The position numbers were made by a program, and so were the translations under genes. Shown in pieces: positions 5,624 through 31,170 of a DNA stretch of 64,000 nucleotides. How positions within the stretch are numbered: position 1 is the first letter of the stretch; each line of letters starts with the position of its first letter. Under the pieces are notes generated by a model. That model was not told the DNA's origin. It made no database searches and saw only the letters and a list, made by a program, of their open reading frames with translations. Source of the stretch: Ramazzottius varieornatus (Eukaryota; Animalia; Tardigrada); contig BDGG01000001.1 of assembly GCA_001949185.1 (NCBI GenBank), forward strand, positions 7,638,149 through 7,702,148. The letters run 5' to 3'.

Positions 5624-8600
5624 ATGGAGCATGCGGACGACGATCTAGACCTGCACCAACCCATTGAATGGCAACCGGAAGTCGAAGCCTTCCCCAACTT
5701 TGTCATGCTGGTAGTCTCGAAACTTGGCCAGGAGACTGCAGAATGGAATTATGACGTCCGGCCAGAGGAGAAACGACTGACCATCTACATGCTGAGTTAC
5801 AAACACGACATGGTGGTGGTCGACACTTGTTTGTCTTTGCACTTCCGGTCGGAACCACCTGATGTACCGGTATCCTGTGCGTATTCCCTCACTCCTACAT
5901 TCAGCACCAAAGGACAACAACAGACCTGCTGGCTGCTCTTTGGACGAAACTTCCTGATATCTGTCGCCGAAGTTCCGAGATTGCTCCGACGTTTGGACCA
6001 AGACAGGTTGGAGCGAGACGCAGCTCCGTGTCCGTCAGCTAAGAAGGCAGAAAAGGATGGGGTTGCACACGAGGCGTTTTCTGAGTTCACGAAGCAGGTT
6101 GTCCCCCAATCTGGGCAAGAAACGTCGGCGTGGAAATACGATGTTCAGCAAACGGAAAGAAGGATCACGGTTTTAGGCTGGCTTATACGCACCACTTGGC
6201 TGAGATTGCTGACTGTCTGTCGCTGCACTTCTTCCCCAGTCCGTCAGTTCTATATGTGCACATTTTTCTTCCTCTTGTTAGCGCGGAGGGTAAGCGAATT
6301 GACGCGTCGGTCATTCGAAACGCACTGGGCAAAGACGTTGTGACTACACCGGAAGATGTGCAAAGTGTGCTGCGCCACTTGGACCGGGCAGTTACAGACG
6401 ATGCAGTCGGCGGGCCATTGCGTCGCGAAGAACGAGAGTCTTCTGTAGACAGTCTCGATGAGTGGATAGCGGAGTACGAAGAAGACTCCGAAGAGCGAGG
6501 GATGGCTGTGATAGCAGGAAATGAGCCAGCGAGCAAGAAACGTCGACTGGAAGAAGATGCGAAGGGGTCTTCATTCAAGAAGAAGGGGAAGGCCATAGAA
6601 GAGCTAGTTGTTCCGAAGGAGGAAGAAGAGGCGCTCTTCCAGAAAATGCAATTACAAAACACGCCAAGCTTGAACTTGAACACGATTCCTTCCTTGCCTG
6701 TACATAAGGACTCTGGAGGGACCATTCTGTCGTCGCAGTACTGGAGAAACCAGACAAGGAGTGGAGAGAAGCTGAACTTTACGGTGGACAACGTGAGCAA
6801 CGTGGTCTTGGAGAGCCTACCGACCCTTTCAGAGGACGTACATGAATCCAAAGAGTTGTTGGCTGACAGTGCAACGTATGCTTGGATGCTGCTGGAACAT
6901 CTGCTGGGTGGTAAGAAGGCGATTTCCCGGACTTTCGCCTACACTTCCAGCGGGACTTGTCCCATCGAGAGGAAGGAAATTGTCAGGATTGTAGTCAAAC
7001 TGTGTGACGCCGTTGTCGGTACGTATGGCTAAGATGTTAAATTTGCTGGGTTTCCATCGATTAAATTCAGGCGAGCAAACTCGACCAGACCTGTGTTCCA
7101 ACTGGCGCAGGCCCTCAGTATAATTGGCTGAAAACGCGCGCAACTTCCTGCAGGAAACGCAGCAAGATCGTTTTCAAGTGGCGCACAATTTCCGCCAGTA
7201 ATACTGAATGTGGGTACTTGTGGAAACAATCTTGACGAGTGAGCTCCTATTTGGCGTTCAGGATGTATCGGTTGTACCTTCGCAGAACATATGGAACGGA
7301 CCTTCTCATTGGCGAACAAGGAAGTAATTCGCGCAAAAGCTCTGTCGATGCTTCTTCCGATACTTAACACTCCCTATAACCACATGAGAGGATACAATGG
7401 CAGAGCGCGCTTTCCGTCCGATGAGTCTCTGCGTCAACTTCTGAAAGGGAACTCGTACCCTGAGAGCGGTAAGATACTCAGCAGAACTTGTACTGTATAC
7501 TTCTAAGTCGGACGAACGCTATGACTTATGGGAAGAACCGTGGTAATTGATGTTCTTTAGGTATGGAGCAGATAGCCGATGGTTTCGACTTCTCCTTGGA
7601 CGAAAATATGCTTGAGTTGAGCGGGGAGCTTTATAAAGAAGATGACGAGAAACTGACAGTGGTCAGTCGTTGGGGTCGTTTCGCCATGGATATCGTGGCC
7701 GAGTTGGTTGGTGGCATCGAAGCACTGAATCGAGTCCAGGAAGAAACTGCAGGCAAAATGCTGGCTCTCATAGGGGAAGATGTCTTGGAGGCTATATGGA
7801 GTATGTCTTAACGGGGAAGTACTGAAACACTGTGTTCCTTAGTCCTTACTGACATGGAATCGTTTTCTCATTCTCAAGTGGCGCACAGTTACAGACAATA
7901 ACACCGAAGACGTGCGCCACTTTGGATGATGGACTGGCTTAGTTATTTTGTGCACGTTCCAAACAATCCGCCGATCTTTTCGTTTCAGAGAGAGCTCAGA
8001 GTACGTTTGGTAAGAAGGCCGGTCCCCCTCTGACAGATTTCCGAGTCTTTGTCGGGGACTAGACGCGGCTGAAGAAGAATGGATATGGAGCCAGAGTCAA
8101 CGTCACCAGCAACAAGACGCTGATGGCCTCCGTCCTCTTCCAACCTTCTGCCGCATTAGTATGTGGCATGGATGGCCCACCAGCGGTTCCTGGGTGTAAC
8201 TACTGGACGAGCCCGGCCCCTCACCGAACGCGCCTGTCTCCGAACAGCAACCTCTACATGCAGACTGTCAGGTTCGTTGGTGCTGTTATGCCCGTGCATT
8301 TTCGGGACCTGGGCAAACAGACTTAAGAACATTGTTCACTCCAAGTGGCGCGCGATTTCATCCAAGGACTTCGAGAACATGCGCCACTGAGAAGAGCAAA
8401 CGCAGTCGGCATGTTTGTTGTTCCAAGTGGCGCACGGTATAAACCGATAACACTACGAGTGCGCCGCCCGGAAAAGTCTCTTCTCATCGGTTGATGTCCT
8501 GCTTTCAGCTGCGTGTTTTTTGTAGGTTGGCCGAGTTCCAGCGTTAGCTGGGTCCCGAGCGAGGTAAGAGCGTAAGCTTGTATGCCAACAGGGACTATGC

Positions 8601-9187
8601 ACCTTACCTCAGAGCTCTCTCAGCGTATGCCGTTGGGGGAGATGAATACCTCCTCAAATAACTGTTGGAACGGAGGAAAGGCAAGCCCACTGCAAAACTT
8701 ACGGCCCTCCTAGAGAAAGAACTTATAGCTCTGACCTTGCTGGAAGCCCAAGCGTACTGGCGGAAGCCAGCGCCCGATCGAACACAGCTTCGACCGGGCC
8801 ACGATGTCTACATCAGGACCAAGATACTGGAAAGTATCGCCTCTTACTACGGTCCCGGGTCCAAAGAGGACTGCATCAAGAAGCACAGCTCGGCTTTCAT
8901 GATACATATGTTGGGTGTACCGGAAGTGGCGTTCAAGTTGAAGCATGGGAAACCCTTCTGTTCGGAAACTTCGTTCGCTCTTTGTGATTGAGGATCTGCT
9001 GGCGCTCTGTTTGCACTCGAACGAAGTGTTTCAGTTGGCTTTTTCTATCTCTCCTGAGGGCAGTTTGACATATGCCAATGCCAGAATAAGCCGTTGCAAC
9101 AATGATCGGGAAAATGTCTACGTGGCAACAAGACCTGGACGAAAGGTGGAACTCGACTCGCTGCCTTCAGCTCTTGATCCTGAATAA
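5624..9187 (+). pseudogene. Unknown family copy A (2 N-terminal domains + BEN-like repeats), pseudogene
   Basis: Carries the family motifs WNYDV/WKYDV, SSQYW..AWMLLEHLLGG, GFDF..RFAMDIVAELVGG, CNYWTSPAPHRTRLSPNS and YWRKPAPDRTQLRPGHDVYI. Lesions: frameshift near 6170-6180, in-frame stop QR*LGP near 8546, rearranged junction near 8730 and frameshift near 8965. Confidence 0.85.
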
Positions 9188-9481
9188 CTTGCGCCTATTT
9201 CTTTCAACTACGAAGCAATGGCGTTGTTTCAGATTTCGGTTTCTAGAAGCTTACAGCTTTTTGTGCCTTTTTTGTCGCATTTATTGTGATACCATTTGGT
9301 CCTTTGTGCTTGCTATAACGTCAACTTTGGACTTTGGAGGTCGGCAGACGAAACGTACGTCAGACGATCGTTCTCTCAAGTGGCGCACGTTTCCACTGTA
9401 CTTCAGCGGAAGCGTGCGCCTCTTTGGAAAACAAGCTTGTACGTTCTGTTCGCCGGCCTCCCATTTTAGTCCAAATGTCGG

Positions 9482-12400
9482 CTTTGGTCGTTCATCCAGC
9501 TCCGAAAAATACCAGCGCGTTTCACCCTTGTCGTACTGCTGTAAAAGCCGACTGGAAAAGACTTCGAAACAGACGTACAGCAGTCTCTTGGCAGTCTTCA
9601 GATTGTTGCCTGGGATGGCGTACAGGTGTTCGACATGTTCTGCAAGAGACTCTTAGTGTTGACCTAAACCATGCATAAAGGGGAAAATCTCGACCAGATC
9701 GTTTTTCCCAAGTGACGCATGGCACCAGCCAATAATACCAGGAACGTGCGCCACTTGAGATAACAACGTCGCCGAGTGTGTCTGCCGAGCTCCCGAACAA
9801 GTCGAATAACCAACAAGACCGTACCAAATTTGGCACCACCAGCGCTTCGTCCAGTGCTGCCATTGTCAATCCTTCTTTGGCTTTCCTACGTTGCAGGAGC
9901 CTCTTCATGACGACGTCTTCTCCACCCACTGCATACTGTACCAGCGCTTTCAGGTAAGTAGTGTGCTCTTTACTGCCCGCGCCCGTAACTCTTTTTTTGG
10001 TGCTCCGTTCGGGACCCACCTGACGCTGATACTCGGCCAACCTGAAAAATGGTAGCGTGTTAGATTCCTCGCATCGTCTAAATCTGACAGAATTTCCGAT
10101 CCTCGATCGCTGAAACTTTCTGAAATGTGCCGTTTAGTTTCGCCACGAATACCAGCATGCTATGACTGAATAATGAAGCAACCTGGTCAACCACGAGTGG
10201 GATTTTGTGGCAAAAGGGCTAACCAGCTCGCAAAACATGATCGACAAGATCAGTTATCTAAGTAGCGCACTCTAGCGGTGGTGCTAGTTGAACGCGTGCG
10301 CCACTTCAAAAGCTGATCTTGCCAAATTTGTTCCCCCGAACAAGATAGGTGAATGAGTGGTGAATGTTCATCGACCGCTCTGGACTCACTCTACAGTGGT
10401 TCTACTAAGTGGTTGGTGATAGTTTTCCTCAGTCAGAATTCCTGTACAACATTCAGTGATTGCGAAGAGTATTACAAACCTAGCAGTTAGCATATAAAAG
10501 TCGCTGTTGGGTGCAAGACGCGTTCGATGAGAATCGGGACTTGTCCAGTAGTTGCAGCCAGGTTCCGCTGATGGATCGTCCACTTCAGGAACTAGAACCG
10601 CCGGACCTGGTAAGGTACCAGGAACAGAAGCGAGAACTGTTGCTGACGGGAAGAGGAGCGACGCCATCAGGTTCGTAGTCTGTCCCACCGCGATACCACT
10701 CCAGTTACCTCTAAGGAACATATTCCGAACGTACAGCCGAAATGGCTTGTAGGCTAGATCCCCTTCTGGTCCGAAGGTTTTCTGAGCCCTCTCTAGAAAT
10801 AAAACTGGTCGGTAATCGTTCAGACCAATTAAAGGAAACATGGGAGCTCGGCAATCGCGCACTTTTCCAGCCAAAAACCCTGAAAGCGTGCGCCACTTGC
10901 GCGAACGCGACAAGCTCGTTCTGCCAAGTAGCGCACGCTCTCGACCAGAAACACTGAAAACATGCGCCACTTGAGAAAGCAGTCTTTGTCAATTTGTTTG
11001 TTTAGCTCCCGTATGGGGAAAAAACTTAGCTTACCATATATGGCGTCGAGAAGGTCCTCACCGATCAGGGCCAGCGTATTGCCTTCGATGTGCAGCCTCC
11101 CTTTGTGATGGTATCGACACCTCCAACCAGTTCGGCCACGATGTCCATCCCGAAGCGACCCCATCGCTAGACCACCTTCAACTTGTCTGCTTTCTCCCTG
11201 TAGCCCGCCACCATTAACCGCAACTTCTCTTCGTCCACGTAAAAGTCAAAGCCACGTGTGACCTGCACTTTACCTACGATACATAATTAGTAAGCACTTC
11301 CCCCTCGCTTGTTTAAACCAACGATGTTCGAGGAGCTGGTTACCTTCGTCGGGATACGAGCTTTCTTTGAGGTACTCGCGGAGGAACAGGTCGGAAGGAA
11401 AGCGAAATTTAGCCTGTTTGTATCCCTCCAGGTCTCTGTACCCCACATCAGTCAACGGCTTCATCAACGACAGGACCTCTACTCGCACTTCCTCCGTACC
11501 TTCCACGGAGGAGGATCGCCCCATGTGCTCTAAAAAAACATCACTACATGACACTGATTCACTGAAACGAGATACGATAAATCACCATCGACAGTTACTA
11601 CCATGTGAAACCTAGTACGCCCACAACTGAAGCTCGAGATAAGCTCGAGAAGATTGCTTTTCCGAGCAGCGCACGTTTTCATTCAGTTAAACTGGCAATG
11701 TGCGCCACTTTTGGAAACAATCTTGTCGGCAAACAAACTCGCGCACGTTTTCGCTGTTATCGACTAGAAGCGTGCGGCACTTGGGAGAAACAATGCTGTC
11801 GGACAGGTTTATCGAGCTCCCTTTAACTTCATACCGAGAATTCCATCGCAGAGGTCGACGACAATCTTCACCAGTTTCTTCCTGTCGATGGGACACGTCC
11901 CACTAGTAGTGTAGGTGAAACTTCGGCGTACGGCTTCCTGACCACCCAGCAGATGCTCCAGCAGCATCCAAGCGTACGTTACCCTGTCAGCCAACTGGTC
12001 TTCGAACTCTCCCAGAAGATTAGGCAGGCCTTCCAAGGCTTTTTTATCCACGAAGATGTCAGCTGTGCAATTCAGCTTTTCCCGACTTGCTGCAGGAACA
12101 GTCCAGTACTGCGACGACAGGATGGTCCCTCCACAACCTTCATGTACAGGTAAGGAAGGTCTATCGTCCAGGTTCAGCTTCATTCGTGCTCTTCGCACTC
12201 ATCTCAGCAAATTACATCGTTCTCCACTTCGCCACCGGCATCAACCTGCTTCCTTGTCTTTAGTTTCTTCAGAGCAACTGGTAATTCTTCCTCTTCATCA
12301 ACCAAGCGTCTCTTTGCCGTTGGTTTCATTGGAGGCTTTTCCGGAGAAGCCACTTTAGTTTGGTTGGATCGCCGTACCTGTCGATGCGATTCTACTTCCG

Positions 12401-13312
12401 CTTCGTCCTCTTCTTCGTGCTTCGATGCGCCAAAGTCTGGACCAATTTCTTCTCCACCAGAGTCTTCTTCGTAGCGTGCAGCCCAGTCATCGAGACTATC
12501 CTGAGACTCCACAGACTTGCCCCGCTCTTCGTGGTTCTCTCCAACGATGGTAACTTCCTCGTCCATGTTTCCAGTGTCATACGGATCGTCCAAACTATCA
12601 AGTATCGTCTGGACATCTTCAGCTGACGATACGGTAGATTCACCCAGCACTCTGTTGATGAACGATGGCTGAGCCTTTCTTTACGCCGGAGCTGAAGACG
12701 GGAAGGTATGTAGGTGTGGAAGGTTCAGCTGGGTTGGCAACGAATTGCAGAGACAGACAGTCTGCCATTACGGCAACGTTGTCCTTGTAGCCCAGCTTGA
12801 CATTATGGTCTCTCTTGCTCTTCGATCGTCGTACTTCCACGCCGCTGTCTCTTGTCCAAACCGTGGAACAACCTGCCTTTCAAAGTCCGAAAAGTTATCT
12901 TGAGACGCTTCACTCGAAGCAACAGAGTCTTCTCGGAGGCGATCATTGTCCAACTGATCCAGCAAAGCCTGAACGTCGAGCGACGATGTCAGAGCCCTCT
13001 TGCCAAGAAGGTTCTGGATAAATGGCGAGTCTTTCTTCTGTCCGCCGGAGCTGAAGGTGGGAGTGAGGGAGTAGGTGGAAGGGTCGGAAGGTTGGAAAGT
13101 GAACTGCAGGCAGAGGCAATCGTCCACTGCCGCGACGGCTTCCATCTCGTCCGTGTACTTTAACGTGAAGATGGTCAGCCGCTTCTCCTCCCTCCACACG
13201 TCGTACTTCCATCTCGCCGTCTCCTGTCCCAGTTTGGGACCACCAGCATGACAAAGTCCGGGAAGGCGTCCACTTCCGGTGGCCATTCCGTCAAGTGACT
13301 TGTTTCCTTCAT
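9482..13312 (-). pseudogene. Unknown family copy B, pseudogene truncated at ..DERPKP
   Basis: Same exon series as copy C. A 1-nt deletion relative to C near 13240, further frameshifts near 12825 and 12645, and the last exon breaks off at ~9482. Confidence 0.85.
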
Positions 13313-14364
13313 ACGTTCAGGACGATCTCAATGATGTCGGACAGATCCCAGGCAGCATGTCAGAGTCACCTCTGTCGTCCTCCCCTCCCTAGTCTCCTGC
13401 AAATGTTGCAAACCTTCACCTGTTACGACTAGAAAGCAGAATTATTCTGATTCTGAAGATGATAATGATGGAAAAATTGAAAATGCAGACGGTGCAGATC
13501 GACATACACCAAATTACCAATCGAGCGATGGCTCAACAGGTATGACATTCCATACATGACATTACAGTCTGACCGGAATTTCGTTAGTCTTACTTACTAG
13601 CAATGTACATTACTAGCGTGGACTGTCGGTGGTCAGTGCCGGAGCAGCCGGACCGTAGTCACTTATCCCAACTGGGTCCGTCAGATAAAGGACTCTTCCC
13701 GCTCGAAAGGTGGAGAGTTCCGCCCTTTGACCTAAGGTTCTGAGATTCTGAAGGACACCTGTCTGACGACAATCTGCTTTCCTTTGGATCGGCTGAAGGA
13801 GAGTCAACCCGGTTTCTCTTGGTAGAACATCGACCACAAAGCGCACCACCAGAACGCGACAAGACATCTGTGAAACTGAATATTTGCGTCGTTTGGATCT
13901 TTAATTGTGCGGACTGTTTGCCCGTCTGCAAACAAGTGCCCGGTCAGTGAGTGTTGTATCCCGTTCCGTGTGAATTTGCTTTCCGCAAATTGCATTTTCC
14001 GTTGTTCTTTTCCAGTCCGCATCTTGATGGGCGCATAAAGATGGGATCTGCAGAAAAAACCCGATGTTTCGAAAGTTCCCCGAGAGGGTTTTCCTATAAG
14101 TCAAAGAAAGCATATTACAACTGAGCAGGCTTGAAAACCTTTAACAGTGATTTGAACCCGGAAGTTCCATTCCGAATAAGTCCTTTCAGTACGCGTACAT
14201 CGTCGTCTCGAACGTTCAGAGCAAGCTCCGAGCACCATAATCAGAGAAAAGGGAAGAACCTCGTAACGAAAGAGCCATGACAACAAGAACTCGAATGTAA
14301 AGGATAAAATTTAAACTCGAGAAACGGTTCCAGAGTCCTGAGGGAAAGGCATACATTTTTCAAG

Positions 14365-17300
14365 TTATACATGGAGCGCATGATACAAAGTATTTTTTAC
14401 AGGTTGATATTCCTTTCGTTCGGTCTTTCTCCTGAGGTGTTTCTTAGCACGATTCATCCGCACAGTGGCGTTGATCAGACTATCGGAAGGACTAATAGAG
14501 AACATCAACTGGAAGACCTCGTCTGAATGCAGGCAAACCGCCACCAGATCGTCAAAGACGAACATGGAACGGAAGCCATCGTAGAAGGTCTTTCCCTCCC
14601 GCAATTCGTACGCAGTCTCAAGACCACCCAGCATGTGTAGCATCAACGCATTGCTGTACTTCTTGATGTCGCTCTCTCTCGATCCTGGGCCGAAGTAGGA
14701 GGCAATGCTTTTCAATACCTTGGTTGTGATGTAGACATCGTGGCTCGGACGAAGCTGTGTTCGATCGGACGCTGGCTTCCGCCAGTACTCTTGGGCTTCC
14801 AGCAAGGCCACAGCTTCCGGTCTGGGTCGTTCATCCACTTCAGGAAAGTACCAGCGCGTCTCGCCTTTATCGTACAGCTTCAGCAGACTGGTGGAGTAAA
14901 GCTCCACAGAGTCGTACAGTTTCTTCATTGCACTTTTTCTGGTGTTAGCTGGTAACTCGTAAAGAAGTTCAACGTGTTCTACGAACAAAGTGTCGTTAAG
15001 ATTTCCTTGTTACACGTTCGACACAAGTTTAAGAGACTGTAAAGGACACAGTACAGTACGTGCGGTACGAACCAAATAAGGCGACGATCATAGCTTCGTC
15101 GAGAACTGTCACAGTCTTCCCTTCCTTCTTGGCTCTCCTCCGCTGCAGCAGCCTTTTGACAAATACGCCCTCTCCCCCAACCGCGTACGCCACCAGGGCC
15201 TTGAGGTAGCCAGTGTACTCTCGGTTACCGGCACCCTGAATCTGCTTACGCTTGGACCGTTGAGGACCCAGGTAACGCTGATACTCGACCAACCTACACA
15301 ACAAACCAGCTCCACTCAGACTGGATACTAAGACTGGGACTTAGACTGGGTACTAAAGATATCCACTTTTCTATTCCAGTAGCTGGATGCTTTGTAATGA
15401 GTTTTATGATAGTCTGGAAAATTTGGGAGCTCGGCAAACAAGCCCACACAGCTTGTTTATCCAAGCAGCGCACGTTTCCAGTGTTCTCGGCCGGAAACGT
15501 GCGCCACTTGGAAACGATACGGTCGAGTTTGTCTGGCGAGATAGCAGTGAGTCCAGTCTAATGATTGGACTTATTTTCGTTTCTTCGCTAGTGTCGATAA
15601 AGTGTTTTTCTTATTGCTAGTGCAGTACTAAGTACTAACCTGGCTGTTAGCATATAAAAGTCGCTGTTGGGTGAAAGACGCGTTCGATGAGGAGCGGGAC
15701 TTGTCCAGTAGTTGCAGCCAGGTTCCGCTGGTGGATCGTCCACTTCAGGAACTAGCAGCGCCGGTACGGCATTCGAGCCAGAGGAAGCATCGACCATGGA
15801 CGGGAAGAGGATGGAGGCCATCAGCCTTGTGCTTTCTTCCACGTAAACCCTGCCTTTGAGACAGAACATGGCCTGAATATGCCGCCGGAAGATGCTATAG
15901 GCAAACTCTTCTTCCGATCCAAATGTCTTTCGGGCTCTCTCTGAAAAAAACACTAACGGTTAGAAAAGTTGGTGTCATAAAACTTATGGCAGCTCGGCTC
16001 GAAAGATCATTTCTCAAGTGGCGCGCCATTTCAGTGATTAACACTGACAACGTGCGTCACTTGGACAAGCCGGCCCATATCACTTTTACAAGTCGCGCAC
16101 GGTTTCAGCCAACAACAGTGAAACGTGCGCCATTTGGGCAAACAATCTCGTCGGGTTTTACTTGCGGAGCTCCCAAATGCAGAGAAAGTAGGGTTACCGT
16201 ATGTTGCGTCGTGGAGGTCCTCGCCAATCAGAGCCAATGTGCTTCCTTTGATGTGATGTCGGCCTTTGATGATGACGTCGACACCACCAACCATCTCGAC
16301 CACAATATCCATCGCGAAGCGACACCATCGCTGACGTACTGGCAGCCCAATTTCCTGTTCGTTGTAGCGTTCTTCCATTTCGCGAAGTTTCTCTTCGTCC
16401 ACGTAAAAGTCAAAGCCATGTGCAACCTGCACTTTGCCTGGATGTATTACAAGAACAGCCGGTTTACAAAAACGGAAAAAAGGAGCACGCGAGTTTCGTA
16501 CCTTCCGCTGGGTGCGAGCTTTCTTTCAGGTAGTCGCGAAGAAAAATGTCGGAAGGGAACCGCGACCTGCCGTCCGTGTAACTCTTCTGGTCCTTGTACG
16601 TTACACTAGTCAACGGCTTCAACATGGATAAAATTTCGGCTCGTACTTTCTCCGGGTTCGTCAGCGAGAAGGTCCGCTGCATGTGCTCTGTAACATCGAA
16701 CGTTTCACTAACACTGGGATGCTATCGGGAACATACAGGAACTGGGCAAACAAACTCGACCATTATTGGTTTTCCAAGTGGCGCAAACTTGCAGCCAACA
16801 ACAATGGAAACGTGCGCCACTTCGGAAAACGGTCCTGCCGAGCTTTTCAAAGTCGCGCACGCTTCAGTTCGCCAGTTTGGTCATCAGTCTTGTCGAGCGC
16901 TTTGCCGAGCTCTCATATCATAATCATGTACCGATAACGGCATCACAGACGTTGACAACAGACATGGCCAACTCGTTCCTCTCGATCGGACATGTACCAC
17001 TCGTGGTGTAGGCGAAACTTCGAGTTATCGCTTCACAACCACCCAGTAAATGTACCAGCAGCATCCAAGCGTACGTTACACTGTCAGCCAGCGAGTCTTC
17101 GGGCCCATCCCGAAGGTTCGGTAGGCTTTCCATGGCCACACTATAGACGAAGACGTCCATGGTGCAATTGAGCTTTTCCCGACTTGCTCCAGGAACGGTC
17201 CAGTACTGCGATGACAGGATGGTCCCTCCACAACCTTCATGTACAGGTAAGGAAGGGATATCGTCCAGGTTCAACTTCAAGGTACTCGCCGCACACATTT

Positions 17301-18453: not shown

Positions 18454-19092
18454 CTTGCGCTGACAGTCCAGAACCCTCCTGCACGTCCAGCGCCGTCAAC
18501 CCGATAGCAGATCCGGCCAATGCAACTTTCAGTCAACCGAAATTCGGCAAACGCGAGGGATGTGTTGCGATGTATTACGCTCGCGAACGGTGCAACGAAA
18601 ACATCCTGCGTGAATACTCATTACTCAAGAGCGAAATTGCGTTATAGAATGCCGTATGTCGGTTTTCAGCGCCGGATGGCTTGCACTCTCTGGATTTGGT
18701 CGAGCAATAGCACGCCGTTCGGGGGGCGCGGCTAGTTCCCGCATGATTTAGCTGCGCGTAAGAAACTGTGGGGGTGTCCGGGCTGATGGCTCCCCGTCGC
18801 TCGAGCTTTCTAGTTACTACCATCAATTTGCTCCGTGAGGTTCAGTTCTTTCACAGCCGAACAGCGAAGGGATTTGTGCATTTCGGCAGGTAGAAGAATA
18901 TGCATTTGACTGATACATCTTGCGATATTAACACGGCAATGCCGAGAACGAAAGGCAGTGTCATTAGATTTCCGGTCATCGTACAGTACTTGTTCGCACT
19001 CTCCACCAAACTTCACCTTTTAACAGTCGGCATATAACACAAAGCAAATGCGGCCACGAAACCGAACATTAAGCAAGAGGGAAAGACACACG

Positions 19093-22000
19093 TCAGGTTA
19101 CGCTAAGAGCCAGATGCAAAGAATCGCCATCTCTCTTTATCCCGACGACCTGCCTTTCCCGACCACCTCTCTTTATCCGACGTGTCTCGTGGTCTTTGTA
19201 ACACTGCATCCTGGCATTGGCATAGATCAAGCTGGCGTTAGGAGTGATAGAGAATAACAAGTGAAATACCTCGTCTGAATGCAGACACACTGCCACCAGA
19301 TCGTCAAAGACAAACAGGGAGCGAAGACCGCCGTAAAATGTCTTCTTATCCCAAAACTCATAGACCGTTCCTGGTCCGCCCAGCATATGCACTAGCAACG
19401 CGAAGTTGTACTTCTTGATGCAATTCTCTCTGGACGTTGGGCCAAAGTAAGAGACGATACTTTGGAGTAGCTTGGTTGTGATGTAGACATCGTGGCCCGG
19501 TCGCAGCTCAGTTCGGTCGGGCGCCGGCTTTCGCCAGTACTCTTGGGCTTCCAGCAAGGCCACAGCTTCTGACTTGGGTCGTTCATCCAGCTCAGGAAAA
19601 TGCCACCGTGTCTGACCTTTGGTGTACAGTTCTAGTTGACGCTTCGCAAAGACTTCTAGACAGTCTCGTAGCTTTTCCGTTGCGCTTTTCCTTTCTGTGG
19701 TTGGTATCTCAAAGAGACGTTCCACGTGCTCTAAGAGGAAACAAGACTGTAACGGGTCAGCGCGGACTGTAAAACTGGGTTCTCCATTCAAAAATTCAAC
19801 AAACCAAAGATGGCAGTTTTCAATGCGTCGTCGAGAAGGGCCACACGTTTTCCTTTCCTCATCGCGTTCTTCTGCTGCAACACTCTTTTCAGGAAGGCTT
19901 CTTCCCCACCAACCGCATATGGTACCAGAGCCTTGAGATAGAGAGCGTACTCGGCACCTGCTCGAACCATCTTTATCTTGGCTCGTTCGGGACCCAAATA
20001 TCTCTGATACTCAACCAGCCTACAAACGCGAAGCTCGCAGGCTTGATGAAGGTTCTTCACTGAATGTAGAACGAAGTAGAACGTTTTTGTGCGCGAGCTT
20101 GGGGAATAAACTCGACATCGCTTCCCCAGGTAGCGCACGTCCTTGGTGTCATTCGCCGGACGCGCGACACTTGGAAAACGATCCTGCCAACTTTGCAGTC
20201 TCAAGTGGCGCGAGCTTCCAACCATTCACGCTAGAAACGTGAGCCACTTGAAAAAACAAACTCGTCGAATTTGTTTATCCAGCTCCGATGTACCAACCTG
20301 GCAGTCTGCATGTAGATATCCCAGTTTGGCGAAAGACGTGTCCGATGAGGAGCGGGTCTTGTCCAGTAGTTACATCCTGCTTCGGCTGGTGCGTCGTCCA
20401 CATCAGGAAGCGGTACTAGACCGGTAGCACCTGAGGCGTCGGCTCGGAAGAGGATAGACGCCATCAGTGGCGCATTCCGGCTAACGTCCACTGCAGTGCC
20501 CCTTCTCTTGGGCGGTCGCAGGTAACCCCAGAGGCTGGCCCGGAAGTCCTTCAGGGTGGGTTTCAATTCCTTACCGAACGTCTTCTGAGCTCTCGCTAAA
20601 GATGAGCTTGAAAACGTTAGATATTACAGCAGACAGGTCAGAACTGATAAGAAAATTTACCCCATATGGCTTCGAAGATATCGTCTCCGATCAGCGCCAG
20701 AATGCTTCCTCGTGATTCCTTCTGGCCTTTATGCAATACTTCCGTGCCTCCAGCTAACTCCGCTGCGATGTCCATGGCGAAGCCTCCCCATCGTTGGAGT
20801 ACTTCCAACTCTTCTGCTCCATCCTTATAGTGCCGTGTTATATTCGCGAGCTGCTTTTCGTCAAGGTAAAGGTCAAAGCCATCAGCAACTTGTACTTTAC
20901 CTAAAAAATGTTTTCGCTATCGGAAAATCGGCCAAAAAGAACGAAGAAAAATCACGTAATTACCTTCTTCTGGATACGAGCTATTATTCAGGTATTCTCG
21001 AAGGAAGAGATCGGAGGGAACACGAGTGCGTTCACCAGCTCTTTGTTCTTTGGAACCCTTGAGATTCTTATAGGGTATGTTAGTTAACGGCTGCAGTAAC
21101 GCCAGAACTTCCGTATGCACAACATCCTTGTTTTCCAACGAAGAAGTTCGCTCCATATGCTCTGAAAAACAATAACGAAAACATTGCGTTACAAAGGTCG
21201 GAACTGAAACCCAGACGTTTCCTTCTATGGGACTGGAGCAAACAAAGCGTACAGTACATGATGGTTTTCCCAAGTCAGACACGCTTTCAGCCAGTAACAC
21301 TAAAGAGGTGCGCCATCTGGGAAAACAGTCAAGCTCAATACCAGGGTTTTTTCAAGTGGCGAACGCTTCCAGCTAATAACACTGAAACCGTGCGCCACTT
21401 AGGAAACGGTCTTGTCGAGCTCGCAAATCCTTCACATACCGAGAACCGCGTCGCACAGGTTGACGACGATCTTGACCAATTCCTTCCTTTCGATCGGGCA
21501 TGTCCCACTGGACGTGTATGTGAAACTCCGAGATATCGCTTTCCAGCCACCCAGCAAATGCTCCAGCAACACCCAAGCATAAGCTACACTCCGGACCAGA
21601 TCTTGGACCGGAAGCGCTATAGGAAACGGAAGCTGTGCTGCGGCAAGACTCTTGATGCTTTTGATCGCTTTCTTGTCCACGAAGACGTCCATGTCGCAGT
21701 TCAGTTTCTGTCGGGCAGCTGCCGCCTTTTGCCAGTACTGCGACGAGAAGATCGTACCACCACATTCGGAGTACGGAGGCGCAGACGGCATATCTTTGAC
21801 ATTCAGCTTCAGCGAACTCTTTAACTGCATCTCAGCGAGGATTTCCTCGTCTACCTCTTCACCGACAACCCCAACAACGAGTCTTCTTTTCTTGGAGGGT
21901 TTCTCAGTGGAGGAAGACTTCAGCAACGGTTCCTCGGCTGGTCGTTTCTTTCTTTTGGCTTTCACTGCTACAACTTCCGGTGAAGTATCTCTGGAAGGCG

Positions 22001-22694
22001 ACGTGACGTCGTTTCTATCTTCCGGGATGAAATCCTCCGAGCTGTCGTCGACGAAGCCCTTCTCAATCGGTACGGCCTGCTTATTCAAACTATCAACGTA
22101 GTTTTCGCCTCGGCAGCGCGATTTTTCTGCAGTAGAGTCCTTCTCGATGTTTTCTGCGTCTTCTCCATACTTACTGTCTAAATGCAGCAATATGGTTCGA
22201 ATGTCTTGGGGAGAAGTAACGATGCCTTTGCCCAACACCCGCATGATGAAGGCTGGTCCTATCTTCTGGCCGCCGCAGCTGTAGATGGGAATGAAGAGGT
22301 CCGCCGAGGGATTAGCAGGGTTGGAGAAGAATCGTAAACACAGGCAGTCCCCGACTGCAACCGTATCGTCCTTGTACTCTAGCCTGAAAATTGTCAGCTG
22401 CTTCTCCTTCCTCTGAACATCGTACTTCCATCTTGAGCCTGTAGTCCGCTGCGCAAATTTCGGTACTGCAAGCTTGACAAAGTCCGAGAAGGTGTCCGCT
22501 TCCGGTGGTCGTTCTGATGACTGGACCGGATATTCCATTTCTTCCGTCGTGGGTCCGCTGTTCCGATCCTCGTTTACCCAGGATGCATTAGTCTTCTCGC
22601 CGGTGGCTAGTGGGGAAAAATGGCGATATAATCCCCGTTTGTTTTGGTTTTCTATCAAGTTAAGTACTGTACTTTTCTTGTCGCAGCTTAACAT
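19093..22694 (-). CDS. Unknown family copy D, apparently intact 6-exon gene (1 N-terminal domain, 4 BEN-like repeats)
   Basis: Open exons ~22694-21440, ~21162-20964, ~20900-20661 (KVQVADGFDLYLDE..FAMDIAAELAGG..LALIGDDIFEAIW, read manually), ~20596-20298, ~20020-19805 and ~19731-19093. The start could instead be MEYP at ~22537. Confidence 0.85.
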
Positions 22695-23749: not shown

Positions 23750-26700
23750 TTAGGAAACGTTTAGTGCCAGATGTAACAGATCGTCGTTTTTTGTACTCTT
23801 CGCCGTAGCTCGTCTCGCCAGACGCTTCTGCTGCTTGTTGTAACGGGCTATGCCGGAGTTGGCATAAATGATAAGAGCATTGGGGTTGAGGCAAAACATC
23901 ACCTGGAAAATTTCTTCGGCGTGCGAGCAAACTGCTACCAGATCGTCAAAGTCGAACAAGGGCCGAAGACTTCCCGCCACCTTCAGCAGTTTGCGTGCAG
24001 TTTCCAAGCCACCCAGCATGTGTACTATCAAAGCACAGCTGTACTTCTTTGTGGATTTCTCTGGGGACTGTGGACCGTAGTACGAGGCGATACTTTCCAG
24101 TTGCTTGGTCCTGATGTAGACATCGTGGCCCGGTCGAAGCTGTGTTCGCTCGGGCGCCGGCTTCCGCCAGTATTCTTGCGCTTCCAGCAAGGACAAAACT
24201 TTCGGTTTGGGTCGTTCATCAAACTGGGGAAAGTACCAGCGTAACTCGCGATTGTCGTAGGACTCCAGTTCACTGAGGGAAAACTTTTCCAGAGCGCGGC
24301 ATAGATACTTCATCGCACTAATCCTCTCTGTACCTGTCACCACAAAAAGGCGTTCCAGGTGCTCTGCAAAAATAAAAGTCATGGCAAAAGTAAAAATAGC
24401 CAAAGGTCCACTTTCTCTGCTGACAGTCAAGCGAAGCAAGCTTACCAAAAATAGCCAACATCAGCTGGTCAAGAAGAAAGCCCGCAGGTCGCCGTTGTTG
24501 TGTATCGTGCCTCCGCTGCAGCGCTTTCTTCAGAAAGGCTTCTTCTCCGCCAACCGCATACTGAACTAACGCCTCGAGGTACGCGGCGCAGTCTTTGTCG
24601 TTTCAAGCTTTTTGGCCTCATCGCTTTCCGCGCCAAGATACCGTCGGTACTCTTCTAATCTGAAAGAGAAAAACATCAGCGCTATTCGGAACACAGGTAG
24701 CCGAATTCGACAAGATCATCTGCTCAAGTGGCGCACTCTTGCAGCCAGTAGCACTGAGAGCGTGCGCCACCTGGGAAACAATCTCGTCAAGCTTTTCAAG
24801 GTGACGCACGTTTCCAATGTTATCGGCTGAAAGTGTGCGCGACTTGGATGAAACGACCTTGGCGAGTATATTTGCCGAACTTCCGTTTCTAGTTCGAACA
24901 TCGAGAAAAAGGTGATAAACTAACCTGGAAGTCAGCATGTAGATATCGCTGTTGGGGGAAAGACGTGTTCAATCAGAAGCCGGTTTTGTCCAGTAGTTAT
25001 AGCCAGGTACCGCTGAAGGACCGTCCGCTTCTGGTACAAGAACCAAGAGTATGGAGTTCGATGAGCAGGAAGAACCGTCGTTGGTATTGTCCTTCGCAAC
25101 GGCTCTTTTCTTCTTCTTATCCTCAACGGCGACGAAGAAAGCGGCCGCGAATACCCCTGAACGAAGGTTCGGAAGTCTGTAAAGGCAGGAGTGTCGTCGG
25201 AGCCGAACGACGCCTGAGCTCTCGCTACAAAAGCAAGTAGAAGGTAATACAGTAAATGTATGCAAGATGATGGTGCCGATTGAGGCGTACCCCATACAGC
25301 TTTGAAGAGATCTTCGCCTATCAATTCTAAATGTCGTCTCCGGTTTCCTCCTGGCGTCTGTCGAGAGCTTTGGTGCCCCCAACCAGCTCTGCCACAATGT
25401 CTACAGTGAAGCGACACCATCGCTGCATTACCGTAGACTTTGCCCCAGCTTCTTTGTGAAACTGCTCAATGTCGTCCAGCTTTCCTTCGCCCAGGTAGAA
25501 GTCGTAACCATGAGCGATTTGTATTTTGCCTGAACAGCGAATAAACAGATCTGGTACTTCTTTTAACAACCAAAACATACCAAAACAAGAAGAGAGTTGG
25601 TGATATCCTACCGTCATCGGGATACGAGTTATCTTTCAGCCGATCATGAATGAACTCGTCCGACGGACATCGAGCTTCACCTCTGGAAAGCCCTGCGTCC
25701 TTGAACGGTACGCTGGCTATGGGCTTCAACATCGAAAGTACCTCAGTTCGTACTTCTTCTTTATTCGTCAATGTGAGGGTCCACTCCATGTGCTCTGGAA
25801 AACATACAGCAATGTACCACACAAGTCACGCCGTCATTGTATGTACTCTGTCGAGGATTTCACCTACTGGAAACTGAGCAAGATCGTTTTCGCCAAGTGG
25901 CGCACGGTCTCGGTGTTTATGGCTGAGAAGGTGCGCCATTTGGGACAGCGAACTCCCCAACATTAATTTCTGAAGTGGCGTACGCTCTCAGCCAATAACA
26001 CTAACACATGCGCCCCTGGGCCCGGGAAAACCAACCTTGTTGAGGTTACGGCGAGCTTGAAAGAGATTCCAATTCATTCACATACCAAGAACAGCATCAC
26101 ACAAGTTAAAGACAACCTCCACCAGCTCCTTCCTGGCAATCGGACACGCACCACTCGATGCGTAGGTGAAACTTCGAGAGACGGCCTCTTTACCACCCAG
26201 CAAATGCTCCAGCAGCATCCAAGCGTAGGCTACACTCTGAATGAGTTTCTGCACATAAGCTGGTACAGGAAGCGACAACTGCAACACAGCGAGACTCTGT
26301 AGACTCGTCATCGCATCCTTATCCACGAAGATGTCCATGGTGGTACAATCCAGCTTTTCGCGGGTCCCCTCTGGGTTCCTCCAGTACTGCGACGACAGGA
26401 TGGTACTTCGGAATCGGAATGTAAGGGCAACGAAGGCATGTTTGCTGCTTCCAGTTTCAGCGAACTGCCGCACGCGCCTTTGCGAATAAATGCTCGGCTT
26501 GTTCAACTGTCATAGTACCAAAAACCTTCCGTTTCTTCGGAAGCTTGACGGTCTCAGAGTATCCAGCAGGCCGCTTTGCCTCAGGTGCTCTGTAGGTAGT
26601 TCCGGTCCACTGAGGGCGCAGCCAACCGAAAGACAATTCGAGCTTTCTCCCATCTTCTGACGATATTTCCCCTTCGCTGTCGTTCTCGAGATGTTTGTCG

Positions 26701-27143
26701 AGCGGCGCGGTCCACCCGTTGGCGCTAGCGACATGAACACTGGCTTTCTACGGAAAGCACAATAGTTCTTCCATCGAACTGCCCATTCCGCCGTCCAGAT
26801 GGTTTAATATGGTTTGAATGTCTTCAGGTGTCGTGAGGATGCTTTTGCCCAACATACCCTGAAAGAAAGCCGGTTCGGCCTTATGTTCGCCGGAGCTGTA
26901 GGAAGGAAGGAAGAGGTCTAAGGGTGGATCGGCAGGGTTGGAGAAGAAACGCAAGCCTAGGCAGTCTGCGACGGTCACCATATTGTCCTTGTATTGCAGT
27001 CTGAAGATTGACATCTGCTTCTCTTCTTCGTTGACATCGTATGTCCATCTTGTGTTCGCGGTCTGCCGTGTGAATGTCGGTACGATACGCTTGACAAACT
27101 GCGAGAAGGGGTCCACTTCCGGTTGGCATTCCTGACAACCCAT
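23750..27143 (-). pseudogene. Unknown family copy E, pseudogene
   Basis: Family motifs present throughout. Exon 1 is broken by a stop and frameshifts (26748; ~26400-26510). Exon 4 has a frameshift and a CGA>TGA stop at YNYWTKPASD* (24969-24971). The last exon is still open. Confidence 0.8.
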
Positions 27144-27645
27144 CTCCCCTACGTTGGCCGTCTGGCCTATGACACCCTCTGTTGGCAACTGCTGGACTGC
27201 GCTGTAAGTAATTCGCTCCTTTTCTGTAAAACAGCAAGATCATTAACTTAGCAATGCGCCGGACGTTGGTCATCCAGATTCCGGAAAATGGTCCCCAAAT
27301 TCCCAATTCCCACTTCTTAAGATTCCAAAACATACGCAATGGCATAATACGGAAATTGCGATAAACAGTGCTAAGTCCGACTGATTGTACGGTTGATTGG
27401 ACATGCAACACATAGCTTGATTTGCCAGAAGTGGTTTTTTCTGGCTTTCATTGTTCACCGTTTCCGATCCTCAATCCTCACACCTAAGTTAGGAAGCTCG
27501 ACCATTTCTTGCTGTTGCAGGTGAACAGGAATCAGCTTGTGCGTCAGGCTTCCTGCGCTGCTATCGTCGACGGTCACTGGTGTCAGGCGCTGAAAAACAA
27601 CGCATGTAACCGTAGCTATACCCGAACGGCTCAGCAGCAGACAAG

Positions 27646-30600
27646 ATGGAGCGTATCAACAACAAACGTCGCCACGACCACGATGCTTTCGCTGACTTTG
27701 TTACGTTGGTCGTCCCGAAAGTCGGACTAGAAAGAGCGAAATGGAAATACGACATCCGGAGTGAGCAGCGGAAACTGACCATCTTCAGACTGAAATACAA
27801 CGAAGACGACGTCGCCACTGTGGCTGACTGCCTGTCCCTGCAGTTCCAGTCTGTGGCCTCCGACTCCTTCGACTACTCGCTCAACCCCAGCTTCAGCTCT
27901 GGCGGACAGAAGAAAGACCCGTCGTATATCGAAGGTCTATTAGGCAAGCGGCACTTGTCGTCGTTCGTCGATATTCAGAACCTGTTGAGTTATTTGGAAG
28001 CATTAGACGCTCTTCCGGATAACAACGAAGACGTTGGTTCGTTGGAATTTGATGAGCCGACGTATCCGCTGTTCGAACGTAAGAGAAGTTTCAGTAGCTC
28101 CATCCATTCAGTGGAAAACGCAGAAGGACAAGACTCGGAAGGGTCGTACTATGAACCGAAGAAGCGGGGCAAGAAATCGCAGCGGAAGATTGAGGATGAC
28201 ATCGATGTTGATTCTCCTCCGATTCCGAAGAAGAAAACAGCAGCCACAGGTCAGCCGAAGAAAGATGAGAAAGGGGTTGGAGAAGAGGCCATTACACCAG
28301 TGAAACCTAGAGAGAGAAAGTCTCGACCAGCGACTGCGGAGAAGAAGAAGGTTGGGAGACCGAGGAAGGAAATCAAAGAGGACGAACTGAAACTCTTATC
28401 GAAAGTCTCGCAGTCCTTTGGAGTCGGAGTAACTCCAGCACCCATCATGGCAAGAGAAAAGGAGCTTCGAACTTTAGAAAAGAAGGGGAAAGGACCTGGT
28501 CGGCCAACAAAAGAAGAACAGCTTCTGAAGAAGAAGGCTGCTGAAGAACTTGTTGAGAAAGCGCAGTCAGGTTTCCCTGCGTTGCCTGCTCATCCATCTT
28601 CTGGTGGGACCATCTTCTCCTCGCAGTACTGGAACACTCCGGCGCCTTCTCGGGAGAAGCTGAACTGTGCCATGGGTATCCATGTCGATAAAGACACGAT
28701 AAAGAATCTTCCGAATGTAGCAGACGCACCTGTTGAAGAACAGCTGGCGCAGAGTGTCAAGTATGGTTGGATGCTGCTGGAGCACCTGCTGGGTGGTAGT
28801 GAAGCCATTTGTCGAAGCTTTGCCTATACTTCCAGCGGTACTTCCCCGATTGAGAAATGGGAGTTGACAACGACCGTCGACAAACTCCTTGACGGGATAA
28901 TGGGTGAGGAAAAATTTCGGTGATATTGAAACAGAAGTTTTGTAAAAAGCAAGCCAAAATGGAGAATCGAGCTCCAGTCGTCTGATGGTTTTCCCTGTGT
29001 AGTAGATTGAATTTGAAGCCCAACGGTTCGATTCCCCCTATCGATTCACTTCTGCAAAAAAGAGTACTTAATTGTTTTCTCAGTGAAGGCTGACGGGCTT
29101 TTGGAAATCCTTTGTCTTTTCAGAGCATATGCGACATTCGTTTTCACTGGAAACAACGGATGAAGTACGTAAAGGCATCATGGTGATCCTCCGACCAAAG
29201 ATGGAGATGAAGTACTCGGACCAAAGGGGTTTCAGGAAGAGGAACCAGCCGAAAGACCTTGCACCTACTCGACAACCCTCGGACATCTTTCTCCTTACTC
29301 ACCTCGAAGGATGCTCCTACCCGAAGCCTGGCAAGGTTCAAGTCGCTCATGGTTTCGACTTCTACATCGACGAGGTTAAGCTAAAGGAAATCAAGGACCA
29401 GTTTAAAGACAAGGAAGAACCTGAGAAAAGACGCTATGGCCGATTTGGTATGCACCTCGTGGCGGAGTTGGTTGGTGGTTTCGACGTCTACTTGAAAGGT
29501 GCGAAACAGGTCGGTGAGGGCCTTGGATCGTTGGCGCTGATCGGAGACGATATCTTCGAAGCCATTTACCGTAAGTCAAACAGACGTTCGTAAGGGTTTG
29601 TGAGAGAACGGCGCGAATCGCCGGCGGGCTGCTCATGAACCTGCATATACTAACTATGGAACTTGTCATGGTACACGAGTACGCAGGTGTGTGAAATCCT
29701 GGTTTTTATGATTTATTTTTGGCAGTGAGGACCCGGAAGACATTCGGTGTGGAAGACACCTTAACAATGTCTCAGTTCCGTGGCTTCATTCGAGGATATC
29801 TGGAACGGAGAAAAGAAATCAAGGTGAACGAAGATACTGGCCTGATGGCGTCCGTTCTATTCCGTCCTATTCCTTCCACTTCTAAGTGGCCTCCAGTTGG
29901 CTCGATTGGTCCTCGAGACCCACCGGCAGTACCCGGTTGTAATTACTGGATTAGTCCAGGCCCTCATCGGACACGTCTTGCCCCCAGTAGCGAATTCTAC
30001 GTGGACACGACCAGGTCTGTAACTCGGTTTGTGGAATAAATCATCGAGTCATATTGATCGGTTGGACTTTAGGTTGGCCGAGTATCAGCGCTACTTGGGT
30101 CCTGAATGCGGGAAGACAACCAAAGGCCAGCACGGTAAAGACTGGGCGACCTACCTGAAAGTGCTCTTGCAGTATGCAGCTGGTGGAGAAGAGCAGTTCT
30201 TGAAGAGACTACTGGAAAGGAGGAAAGCCAAGCAGGAAGGACAAGTTACGGCAGTACTCGACGACGCTTTGGTACTAGCCATCTTTGGTAAGGACCTACT
30301 TTTATCATAATTCACGATTGTTGACACGAATATTTGTTGCTGACGTAAGCAAGTACAGTCGACAAGAATGTTTTCCAAGTGGCGCCCATTTCCAGTGTAA
30401 CTGGTTGGAACTCGCCTGGAAGCGTGAGCCACTTGGGAAAGCAGTCTCATTTGGCGCACCCCTTCACCTTTGTAAACATGCGCCACTTTGTACAACGAAG
30501 TTGTCGAGGTTGCCCAACAAGCTTTTGTACAAATGACAAATTTGTACAAATCTCAGAGCATGTGACGACCCTCTTCAAGGCCCCGAAGAACAAGCAACAT

Positions 30601-31170
30601 CTGCCAGAATGTATCGAGAACTTCTCCAGTCGCCTACTTGACCTGTACGATAAGGGTGTCACACGTTGGTACTTTCCCGGCTTGGATGAACGTCCGAAAC
30701 CTGAAGGTGTGTCCATCCTCGAAGAGATGGAATACTGGCGGAAGCCGGGACCTGACCGAACACAGCTTCGTCCGGGCCACGATATCTACATCAGAACCAA
30801 GATGCTGGAAAGTATCGCCTCCTACTTCGGCCCAGGCTCCAAGGAGAGCGACATCAAGAAGTATAGCTTCGGTGTGATGATGCACATGTTAGGTGGACCG
30901 GAAACATCGCTGAAACTGTGGACAGGGAAGTACTTCCTGGAAGGCTTCCGTTCCATGTTTGTCTTTGATGATCTAGTGGCTGTTTGTCTGCATTCGGATG
31001 AAGTGTTCCACTTGATGTTCTCTGTTAGTCCGACCGATAGTCTGATCTATGCGGGTGTGAGGATGCATCGACGGGATAGGCATCATAATGCCATGCAGAA
31101 GCGGATCGCCAAAGGGGCGAAGTTGCGGTATCCGAGGAACTCGTTGCATTACGCACTCAGTGAGTCATGA
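27646..31170 (+). CDS. Unknown family copy F, apparently intact 5-exon gene with AT-hook-like motifs in the linker
   Basis: Exons ~27646-28903, ~29124-29570, ~29726-30014, ~30073-30287 and ~30558-31170. Linker contains KKKVGRPRKE and KGPGRPTKE. All four YW..P..R..L-type repeats are present. Confidence 0.85.

What the first reader, a model, noticed from the sequence alone, without database searches (positions are those of the whole stretch)
5624..31170. Six-copy cluster of an unnamed multi-domain nuclear protein family, likely quadruple BEN-like DNA-binding proteins
Seen: six paralogs (A+, B-, C-, D-, E-, F+) fill ~25 kb between the housekeeping genes SF3B2 and YEATS4. They share one architecture of about 900-1100 aa: N-terminal domain(s), a D/E- and K/R-rich linker with NLS-like runs (KKRR, KRKKRP, KKRK), and a large conserved C-terminal region. 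Three copies are open (C, D, F) and three are broken (A, B, E), which is birth-and-death evolution. No signal peptide, TM segment or catalytic motif is visible, and I do not recognise the family. Inference: a rapidly evolving, lineage-specific family of chromatin/DNA-binding regulators. Clustered expansion with turnover is typical of genome-defence or transposon-silencing factors.
Basis: partly seen in the sequence, partly recalled or inferred. Interest (0 to 1): 0.9.

Follow-up and report, generated by a model that had tools for sequence, protein, structure and literature searches.

The report
Tardigrade gene cluster of four-BEN-fold proteins
Six neighbouring copies (three intact, three dead) of a tardigrade-only gene encode nuclear-looking proteins whose four repeated modules fold like the BEN DNA-binding domain, although no sequence search recognises them as BEN.

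Summary
The window comes from Ramazzottius varieornatus. Six paralogs lie between an SF3B2 gene and a YEATS-domain gene.

- **Intact copies:** C, D and F equal the public "hypothetical proteins" RvY_02741, RvY_02742 and RvY_02748 (1027, 895 and 940 aa).
- **Broken copies:** A, B and E carry in-frame stops, frameshifts and deletions.
- **Architecture:** one or two copies of an unassigned ~110-aa N-terminal domain, an acidic/basic linker with NLS-like runs, then four ~115-125-aa modules.
- **No sequence match:** Pfam, and profile searches of solved-structure sequences, find nothing.
- **Fold:** an AlphaFold2 model of the last module of copy C (pLDDT 89.6) puts BEN domains first in three independent structure libraries (NACC1, Insensitive, BANP, Bsg25A, BEND3, BEND6, bracovirus BEN proteins), well clear of unrelated folds.
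- **Distribution:** a profile search of 1.84 billion proteins found relatives only in tardigrades or unnamed assemblies.
- **Selection:** the intact copies are old (dS about 1.7-2.2) and under purifying selection (dN/dS about 0.2).

My reading: a tardigrade-specific, sequence-divergent multi-BEN family, probably DNA/chromatin binding. A genome-defence role and "rapid evolution" are not supported. Expression could not be checked. Other first readers of this scan noted similar BEN-like genes elsewhere in this genome.

The parts
5624..9103 (+). Copy A, pseudogene. It has two N-terminal domains, a linker and four degraded modules.
   Evidence: tblastn against copy C shows a frame change near 6172-6181, in-frame stops in exons 4 and 5, loss of about 65 aa at the exon 5/6 junction, and a frameshift in exon 6.
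9449..13316 (-). Copy B, pseudogene, and the closest relative of copy C.
   Evidence: There are stops in the second N-terminal domain and in exon 3, three reading frames across exon 1, and a last exon cut after about aa 74. The tract 12969-13289 is 93% identical in DNA to C at 18088-18409.
14364..18453 (-). Copy C, intact gene RvY_02741 (P0034, 1027 aa). Six exons: 18453-16932, 16687-16502, 16437-16198, 15940-15640, 15293-15073, 14978-14364.
   Evidence: The public protein maps exactly onto the window with GT-AG introns.
17689..18402 (-). The two copies of the unassigned ~110-aa N-terminal domain in copy C (18402-18058 and 18021-17689).
   Evidence: Alignment A4. The domain is homologous to the N-terminus of the distant subfamily (hhalign probability 95.8%, E 7e-9). 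There is no Pfam, solved-structure-sequence or Atlas match.
14437..14808 (-). Module 4 of copy C, lying inside one exon. This is the piece that was modelled, and it has a BEN-like fold.
   Evidence: AlphaFold2 with 44 family modules gives pLDDT 89.6 and pTM 0.84. The best structural matches are all BEN domains.
14903..17214 (-). Modules 1-3 of copy C (protein residues 414-531, 565-675 and 724-848), each interrupted by introns. Coordinates are approximate.
   Evidence: The family HMM matches them with i-E 2.8e-21, 1.7e-15 and 7.5e-27. Each carries a phase-1 intron at the same module position, around HMM position 90.
19092..22538 (-). Copy D, intact gene RvY_02742 (P0001, 895 aa). Six exons: 22538-21440, 21161-20964, 20900-20661, 20595-20298, 20019-19805, 19730-19092. 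It has one N-terminal domain.
   Evidence: Exact mapping of the public protein. Four modules are found.
23753..27188 (-). Copy E, pseudogene, with one N-terminal domain.
   Evidence: There is a stop in the linker, two frame changes in exon 1, and a stop in the conserved motif of module 3. Exon 4 is only partly alignable.
27646..31171 (+). Copy F, intact gene RvY_02748 (P0035, 940 aa). Five exons: 27646-28903, 29124-29570, 29726-30014, 30073-30287, 30557-31171. It lacks intron 2 and lies head-to-head with E.
   Evidence: Exact mapping of the public protein. Four modules are found.
1163..4309 (-). Left flank: SF3B2-type gene (context only).
   Evidence: Pfam PSP (E 1.5e-12) and DUF382 (E 4.9e-48).
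32221..32499 (-). Right flank: YEATS domain exons (context only).
   Evidence: PF03366 matches above the curated cut-off at C1:7670369-7670647.

Best explanation
The cluster holds six tandem paralogs, three live and three dead, of a family found only in tardigrades. The protein has three parts: an N-terminal domain of unknown fold (one or two copies), a disordered acidic/basic linker with classical NLS-like runs, and four tandem modules.

Each module is a strongly diverged BEN-fold domain: a short beta hairpin followed by five helices. Its sequence signature is YW..P...R..L.pG.dVY near the start and a conserved H-(L/M)-L-G-G turn in the middle.

Shown here: the paralogy, the exon structures, the four-module repeat, the BEN-like fold of module 4, the restriction to tardigrades, and purifying selection on the live copies.

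Inferred: the proteins enter the nucleus and bind DNA or chromatin through one or more modules. The strongly basic module 3 (pI about 9-10) is the best candidate for DNA contact. The other modules and the N-terminal domain would serve for protein contacts or self-association. The proteins would then act as multivalent, sequence-specific transcription or chromatin regulators, in the manner of BEND3, Insensitive/Elba or BANP.
For: - **Paralogy and architecture:**
- **Four modules:** a family HMM finds four per intact protein (i-E 1e-13 to 1e-38).
- **Internal duplication:** modules 1-3 share a phase-1 intron at the same module position, as do modules of the distant subfamily. This points to duplication of one ancestral unit.
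- **Model quality:** the AlphaFold2 model of module 4 has pLDDT 89.6 and pTM 0.84, and all five models score 87-90.
- **Foldseek:** the first match among solved structures is the NACC1 BEN domain (probability 0.82, TM 0.56). The first three matches in the viral library are bracovirus BEN proteins (probability 0.96, 0.72 and 0.51).
- **DNA-binding partners:** one paralog is annotated as fused to Myb/SANT-like DNA-binding repeats (PF12776, 28.6 bits against a cut-off of 23.6). A Paramacrobiotus relative has a weak, sub-threshold match to a C2H2 zinc-finger model (21.9 bits against a cut-off of 27).
- **Selection:** dN/dS is about 0.2 between C, D and F.
- **NLS-like runs:** found in the linkers.
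Against: - No sequence method links the modules to BEN. The Pfam BEN model misses all 44 modules at E<=10. A module profile finds no BEN chain among solved-structure sequences.
- Only one module was modelled. An earlier model built from nine close paralogs was poor (pLDDT 51).
- Three of the four modules are neutral or acidic. One of the matched BEN structures, BEND3 BD1, was solved bound to a protein rather than to DNA. DNA binding may therefore hold for only some modules, or for none.
- No expression, localisation or binding data could be obtained.
Confidence: 0.7

Rival explanations
1. The modules have a BEN-like helical fold but work as protein-protein adaptors. The family would then be a nuclear or cytoplasmic scaffold and not a DNA binder.
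For: One of the top structural matches, BEND3 BD1, was solved in complex with a protein partner (PICH) and not with DNA. Modules 1, 2 and 4 are neutral to acidic, with pI 4.9-8.5.
Against: Most of the matched BEN structures are DNA complexes. Module 3 is strongly basic (pI 8.8-10.0) and module 4 has a basic C-terminal helix. Relatives are joined to Myb/SANT repeats, and one has a weak, sub-threshold C2H2 match.
Confidence: 0.15
2. The genes are cargo or remnants of a mobile element or virus, since BEN domains are common in such contexts. The cluster would then reflect repeated insertion and not tandem gene duplication.
For: BEN domains occur in bracovirus proteins. Unchecked first-reader notes elsewhere in this genome mention BEN-like genes inside putative transposons. 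A short palindromic repeat is frequent in the introns of these genes.
Against: No transposase, integrase or reverse-transcriptase domain is found in any exon. The repeat search listed no high-identity terminal repeats. Its longest direct and inverted families are the paralogous coding regions themselves. Intron positions and phases are shared by all copies. The copies are old, under purifying selection, and lie head-to-tail between housekeeping genes. The palindromic repeat also occurs in introns of SF3B2 and elsewhere in the window.
Confidence: 0.07
3. The resemblance to BEN is convergent or generic for a small helical domain. The module would then be a truly new fold family of unknown activity.
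Against: Seven different BEN proteins fill the top ranks of the two VIA-align lists, and the small number of BEN chains among 48,161 representatives makes that unlikely by chance. The gap to unrelated chains is 3-5 Z units. The matches cover 82-101 of about 115 residues. The viral library gives the same answer independently.
Confidence: 0.08

Closest known systems
BEND3 (vertebrate protein with several BEN domains)
   Different: The tardigrade modules are not recognised by the Pfam BEN model. They carry their own signature (YW...HLLGG), share an internal phase-1 intron, and follow a tardigrade-only N-terminal domain. No orthology is implied.
Single-BEN DNA binders: Drosophila Insensitive, Bsg25A/Elba, and human NACC1 and BANP
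   Different: They have one BEN domain each, with other partner domains (BTB in NACC1). Sequence identity to the model is only 9-19%. Whether the DNA-contact residues are conserved could not be compared with these tools.
Bracovirus BEN-domain proteins
   Same: They take the top three places in the viral structure library.
   Different: They are viral and unrelated in sequence (11-14% identity). The tardigrade genes have ordinary cellular gene structure.

Membership tests
BEN domain (Pfam PF10523) | Sequence match to the Pfam BEN model at or above its gathering score | tested here: not met
   There is no hit for any exon, any full protein or any of the 44 modules, even at E<=10. A six-frame scan of the whole genome with PF10523 gives only one sub-threshold hit, and that lies elsewhere.
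BEN domain (Pfam PF10523) | BEN three-dimensional fold (a compact helical domain with a short N-terminal hairpin) | tested here: met
   The model has pLDDT 89.6. BEN domains are the top matches in an all-representative search of solved structures, in a second look at the Foldseek list, and in the viral library, with a clear gap to unrelated chains. Only module 4 of copy C was modelled. Modules 1-3 are tied to it by the family HMM.
BEN domain (Pfam PF10523) | Remote sequence homology by profile-profile comparison with a BEN alignment | not tested
The module profile did not reach any BEN chain among solved-structure sequences.
BEN domain (Pfam PF10523) | DNA or chromatin binding and nuclear localisation | not testable with these tools
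   The evidence is indirect only: NLS-like runs, the basic module 3, and relatives joined to Myb/SANT repeats or showing a weak, sub-threshold C2H2 match.
Transposase or mobile-element protein | A catalytic transposase, integrase or reverse-transcriptase domain, with terminal repeats at the copy borders | tested here: not met
   No such Pfam domain was found. The repeat search listed no terminal repeats around copies. Introns are conserved between copies.

The most novel reading that the evidence does not exclude
Tardigrades may have replaced the canonical BEN repertoire with their own, sequence-unrecognisable BEN-fold superfamily: an N-terminal domain of unknown fold plus one to four modules. 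This superfamily has expanded and turned over in clusters, and its members would act as sequence-specific silencers in genome defence or in stress-linked chromatin control.
Probability: 0.12. Interest if true: 0.7.

Novelty: new variant of a known kind. Interest (0 to 1): 0.5.

Why it matters
Tardigrade-only proteins attract interest because several of them underlie the animals' unusual biology. This family is so far annotated only as "hypothetical protein".

This work gives it a testable identity: multivalent BEN-fold proteins, probably DNA or chromatin binders. It also defines a conserved module and a second domain with no assigned fold.

The Pfam BEN model finds nothing above threshold in this genome. 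This family may therefore be where the tardigrade BEN repertoire sits.

The case also shows a wider point. A modest alignment built from internal repeats and paralogs raised the structure model from unusable to confident.

Tried and rejected
- **Pfam:** no hits on all exons of C and several of D and F, on ten family proteins, on 44 modules at E<=10, or on full-length C, F and relatives. The exceptions are Myb/SANT in RvY_10178-2 and a weak C2H2 match in the Paramacrobiotus protein.
- **ESM Atlas:** the last exon and the N-terminal domain gave no usable hit.
- **Profile searches of solved-structure sequences:** the module and the N-terminal domain gave only chance-level rows.
- **First structure model:** AlphaFold2 of the whole last exon with nine close paralogs gave pLDDT 51 and was unusable.
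- **PF10523 scan of the genome:** one sub-threshold hit. Its ORFs do not look like BEN, and I dropped it as chance.
- **Word-indexed protein searches:** these returned only known members plus BV898_17717.
- **Literature:** no paper names any of the gene identifiers. "Tardigrade" with "BEN domain" gives one unrelated paper on insect insulator proteins.
- **Complex prediction:** not used, because I make no firm binding claim.
- **Joined exons:** no self-joined spliced sequence was sent to any search tool. Full-length searches used database proteins by id. Exons were joined only inside scripts, to check the mapping and to compute dN/dS.
Full report
**Source and setting.** The genome has 55.8 Mb in 200 contigs, and the window is contig C1:7638149-7702148. 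Database proteins identical to the window's genes are named "hypothetical protein RvY_..." from Ramazzottius varieornatus. The left flank carries the PSP and DUF382 domains of SF3B2 on the minus strand. The right flank carries YEATS-domain exons at 32221-32499 on the minus strand. I did not test whether that gene is YEATS4 specifically.

**The observation.** Self-BLAST of all stop-to-stop ORFs shows six sets of colinear, mutually similar pieces. tblastn with the exons of copy C confirms them. The order is A(+), B(-), C(-), D(-), E(-), F(+).

The public proteins P0034 (1027 aa), P0001 (895 aa) and P0035 (940 aa) map exactly onto C, D and F with GT-AG introns. C and D have six exons each and F has five. 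Intron phases are identical in C and D (1,1,1,2,1). F lacks intron 2.

The other three copies are dead:
- A has a frameshift in exon 1, stops in exons 4 and 5, a deletion across the exon 5/6 junction, and a frameshift in exon 6.
- B has stops in its second N-terminal domain and in exon 3, frame changes in exon 1, and a truncated last exon.
- E has a stop and frame changes in exon 1, and a nonsense codon in the core motif of module 3.

B is the closest relative of C, at about 80% DNA identity in exon 1 with a 324-bp tract at 93%.

**Architecture.** A, B and C have two copies of a ~110-aa N-terminal domain. D, E and F have one. A low-complexity linker follows, acidic in C and D and basic in F, with runs such as KKRK, KRKKR and KKRR.

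The C-terminal two thirds is a four-fold repeat. An HMM built from family modules finds four modules in each intact protein, with i-E between 1e-13 and 1e-38. The module is about 115-125 aa. Alignment A3 has one invariant residue (the W of a YW pair) and seven nearly invariant ones, including an H..GG turn.

Modules 1-3 each carry a phase-1 intron at the same module position, around HMM position 90. Truncated gene models of the distant subfamily read through a donor site at that same place. This marks the repeat as an internal duplication of one ancestral exon unit. Module 4 of the window's subfamily has no such intron and lies inside one exon.

**What the module is.** Sequence methods give nothing:
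- Pfam is blank for exons, proteins and 44 separate modules, even at E<=10.
- A module profile finds no relative among solved-structure sequences.
- The protein language model atlas gives no lead.

A first AlphaFold2 run on the last exon, with only nine close paralogs, was poor at pLDDT 51. I then built an alignment by reference only. It holds 44 modules taken from the window, from other loci of the genome and from database proteins of other tardigrades. With it, the model of window:14437-14808 (minus strand) reached pLDDT 89.6 and pTM 0.84. It shows a short hairpin followed by five helices.

Three libraries agree on the fold.

| Search | BEN matches at the top | Next unrelated |
|---|---|---|
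| Foldseek, solved structures | NACC1 BEN ranked first (E 0.53, probability 0.82, TM 0.56) | mixed |
| Foldseek, viral models | three bracovirus BEN proteins ranked first (probability 0.96, 0.72, 0.51) | mixed |

I therefore accept "BEN fold" for module 4. I extend it to modules 1-3 through the family HMM. I do not file the modules as members of Pfam BEN, because that test was run and failed.

**Distribution.** A profile of the last exon was scored by HMMER against 1.84 billion representative proteins. It gave 27 hits at E<=0.001. Every hit that carries a source name is from R. varieornatus, Hypsibius exemplaris or Paramacrobiotus metropolitanus, apart from the weakest, a bacterial Ig-repeat protein that I take for chance. 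The others I looked up come from unnamed ENA or Logan assemblies.

Within the R. varieornatus genome:
- Closely related four-module genes lie on contigs C3, C5 and C8. At least 14 last-exon matches have E<1e-14.
- A more distant subfamily (RvY_06952 to RvY_06957 and others) has one to four modules behind a homologous N-terminal domain.
- A module profile gives at least 76 exon-level matches genome-wide.
- H. exemplaris also has a tandem trio, BV898_17717 to BV898_17719.

In a tree of the last module, ten of the twelve non-Hypsibius rows, including the five window copies, form one well-supported but internally unresolved clade. The two H. exemplaris proteins group apart. The root is at the midpoint, for drawing only. 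This fits expansion after the two lineages split.

One paralog on C5 (RvY_10178-2) is annotated with N-terminal Myb/SANT-like repeats. The Paramacrobiotus relative shows a weak, sub-threshold match to a C2H2 zinc-finger model.

**Selection.** Codon alignments of C, D and F give pN 0.29-0.34 against pS 0.67-0.71. dN/dS is about 0.2 overall, 0.17-0.20 in the modules and 0.3-0.6 in the linker. dS is 1.7-2.2, close to saturation, so the ratios are rough. The direction is clear all the same: old duplicates under purifying selection. "Rapidly evolving" fits only the linker and the gain and loss of copies.

**Likely mechanism.** The fold, the NLS-like runs, the DNA-binding partners of relatives and the multivalent layout point to nuclear proteins that bind DNA or chromatin. 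Module 3 is strongly basic (pI 8.8-10.0), while modules 1, 2 and 4 are neutral or acidic. This suggests that not all modules touch DNA. BEN domains are also known to bind proteins: the matched BEND3 BD1 structure is a protein complex. The role of the N-terminal domain is unknown, and self-association or partner binding is only a guess. None of this was tested. A genome-defence role remains speculation.

**Limits.**
- No profile-profile comparison with a BEN alignment was possible.
Exons were joined only in scripts, for mapping and dN/dS.

**Earlier notes of this scan.** Other first-reader notes on this genome describe the four-fold BEN-like repeat in this window and the variable N-terminal domain. 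They also describe what appear to be the C3 and C5 relatives. They are unchecked AI notes. My results agree with those I could test.

**Verdict.** The BEN-like reading is supported at the level of fold, but not at the level of Pfam membership. The family is a sequence-divergent, tardigrade-restricted variant of a known kind of DNA-binding module, and it is of moderate interest.

Noticed in passing
window 313-359, 1826-1872, 7876-7922, 9378-9424, 16016-16062, 16776-16822, 21354-21400, 24726-24772, 25895-25941, 44792-44838, 46619-46665 and others: A palindromic element of about 60 nt has arms AAGTGGCGCAC and GTGCGCCACTT whose starts are exactly 36 nt apart. The 11-mer, with up to one mismatch, occurs 50 times in the window against 0.78 expected. 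Most copies lie in the cluster, mainly in introns or between exons, but some lie in or beside SF3B2 and further right. It may be a MITE-like repeat or an intronic hairpin.
   Followed up: partly
window 12969-13289 versus 18088-18409: The dead copy B and the live copy C share a 324-bp tract at 93% DNA identity. Its translation is identical over about 70 residues of the first N-terminal domain, far closer than the rest of the two copies (67-80%). This may be a gene-conversion tract.
   Followed up: partly
genome contig C5, about 1,003,000-1,008,000 (L008, L036); protein P0036: The paralog RvY_10178-2 is annotated with three N-terminal Myb/SANT-like repeats (PF12776 above the cut-off) in front of the N-terminal domain and four modules. 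I did not check whether this fusion is real or a merged gene model.
   Followed up: partly
protein P0025 (Paramacrobiotus metropolitanus XP_055346960): A distant relative has the N-terminal domain and one module, with a weak, sub-threshold match to a C2H2 zinc-finger model at its C-terminal end (21.9 bits against a cut-off of 27).
   Followed up: partly
window about 39100-39620: A run of N (an assembly gap) lies in an AT-rich stretch with GC 0.35.
   Followed up: no
window 53948-54736 (+) and 57398-57886 (+): Two further ORFs outside the cluster are 36% identical over 122 residues, so they form another local duplicate pair.
   Followed up: no
window 35589-36628 (+): WD40-repeat exons lie just right of the YEATS gene.
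   Followed up: no
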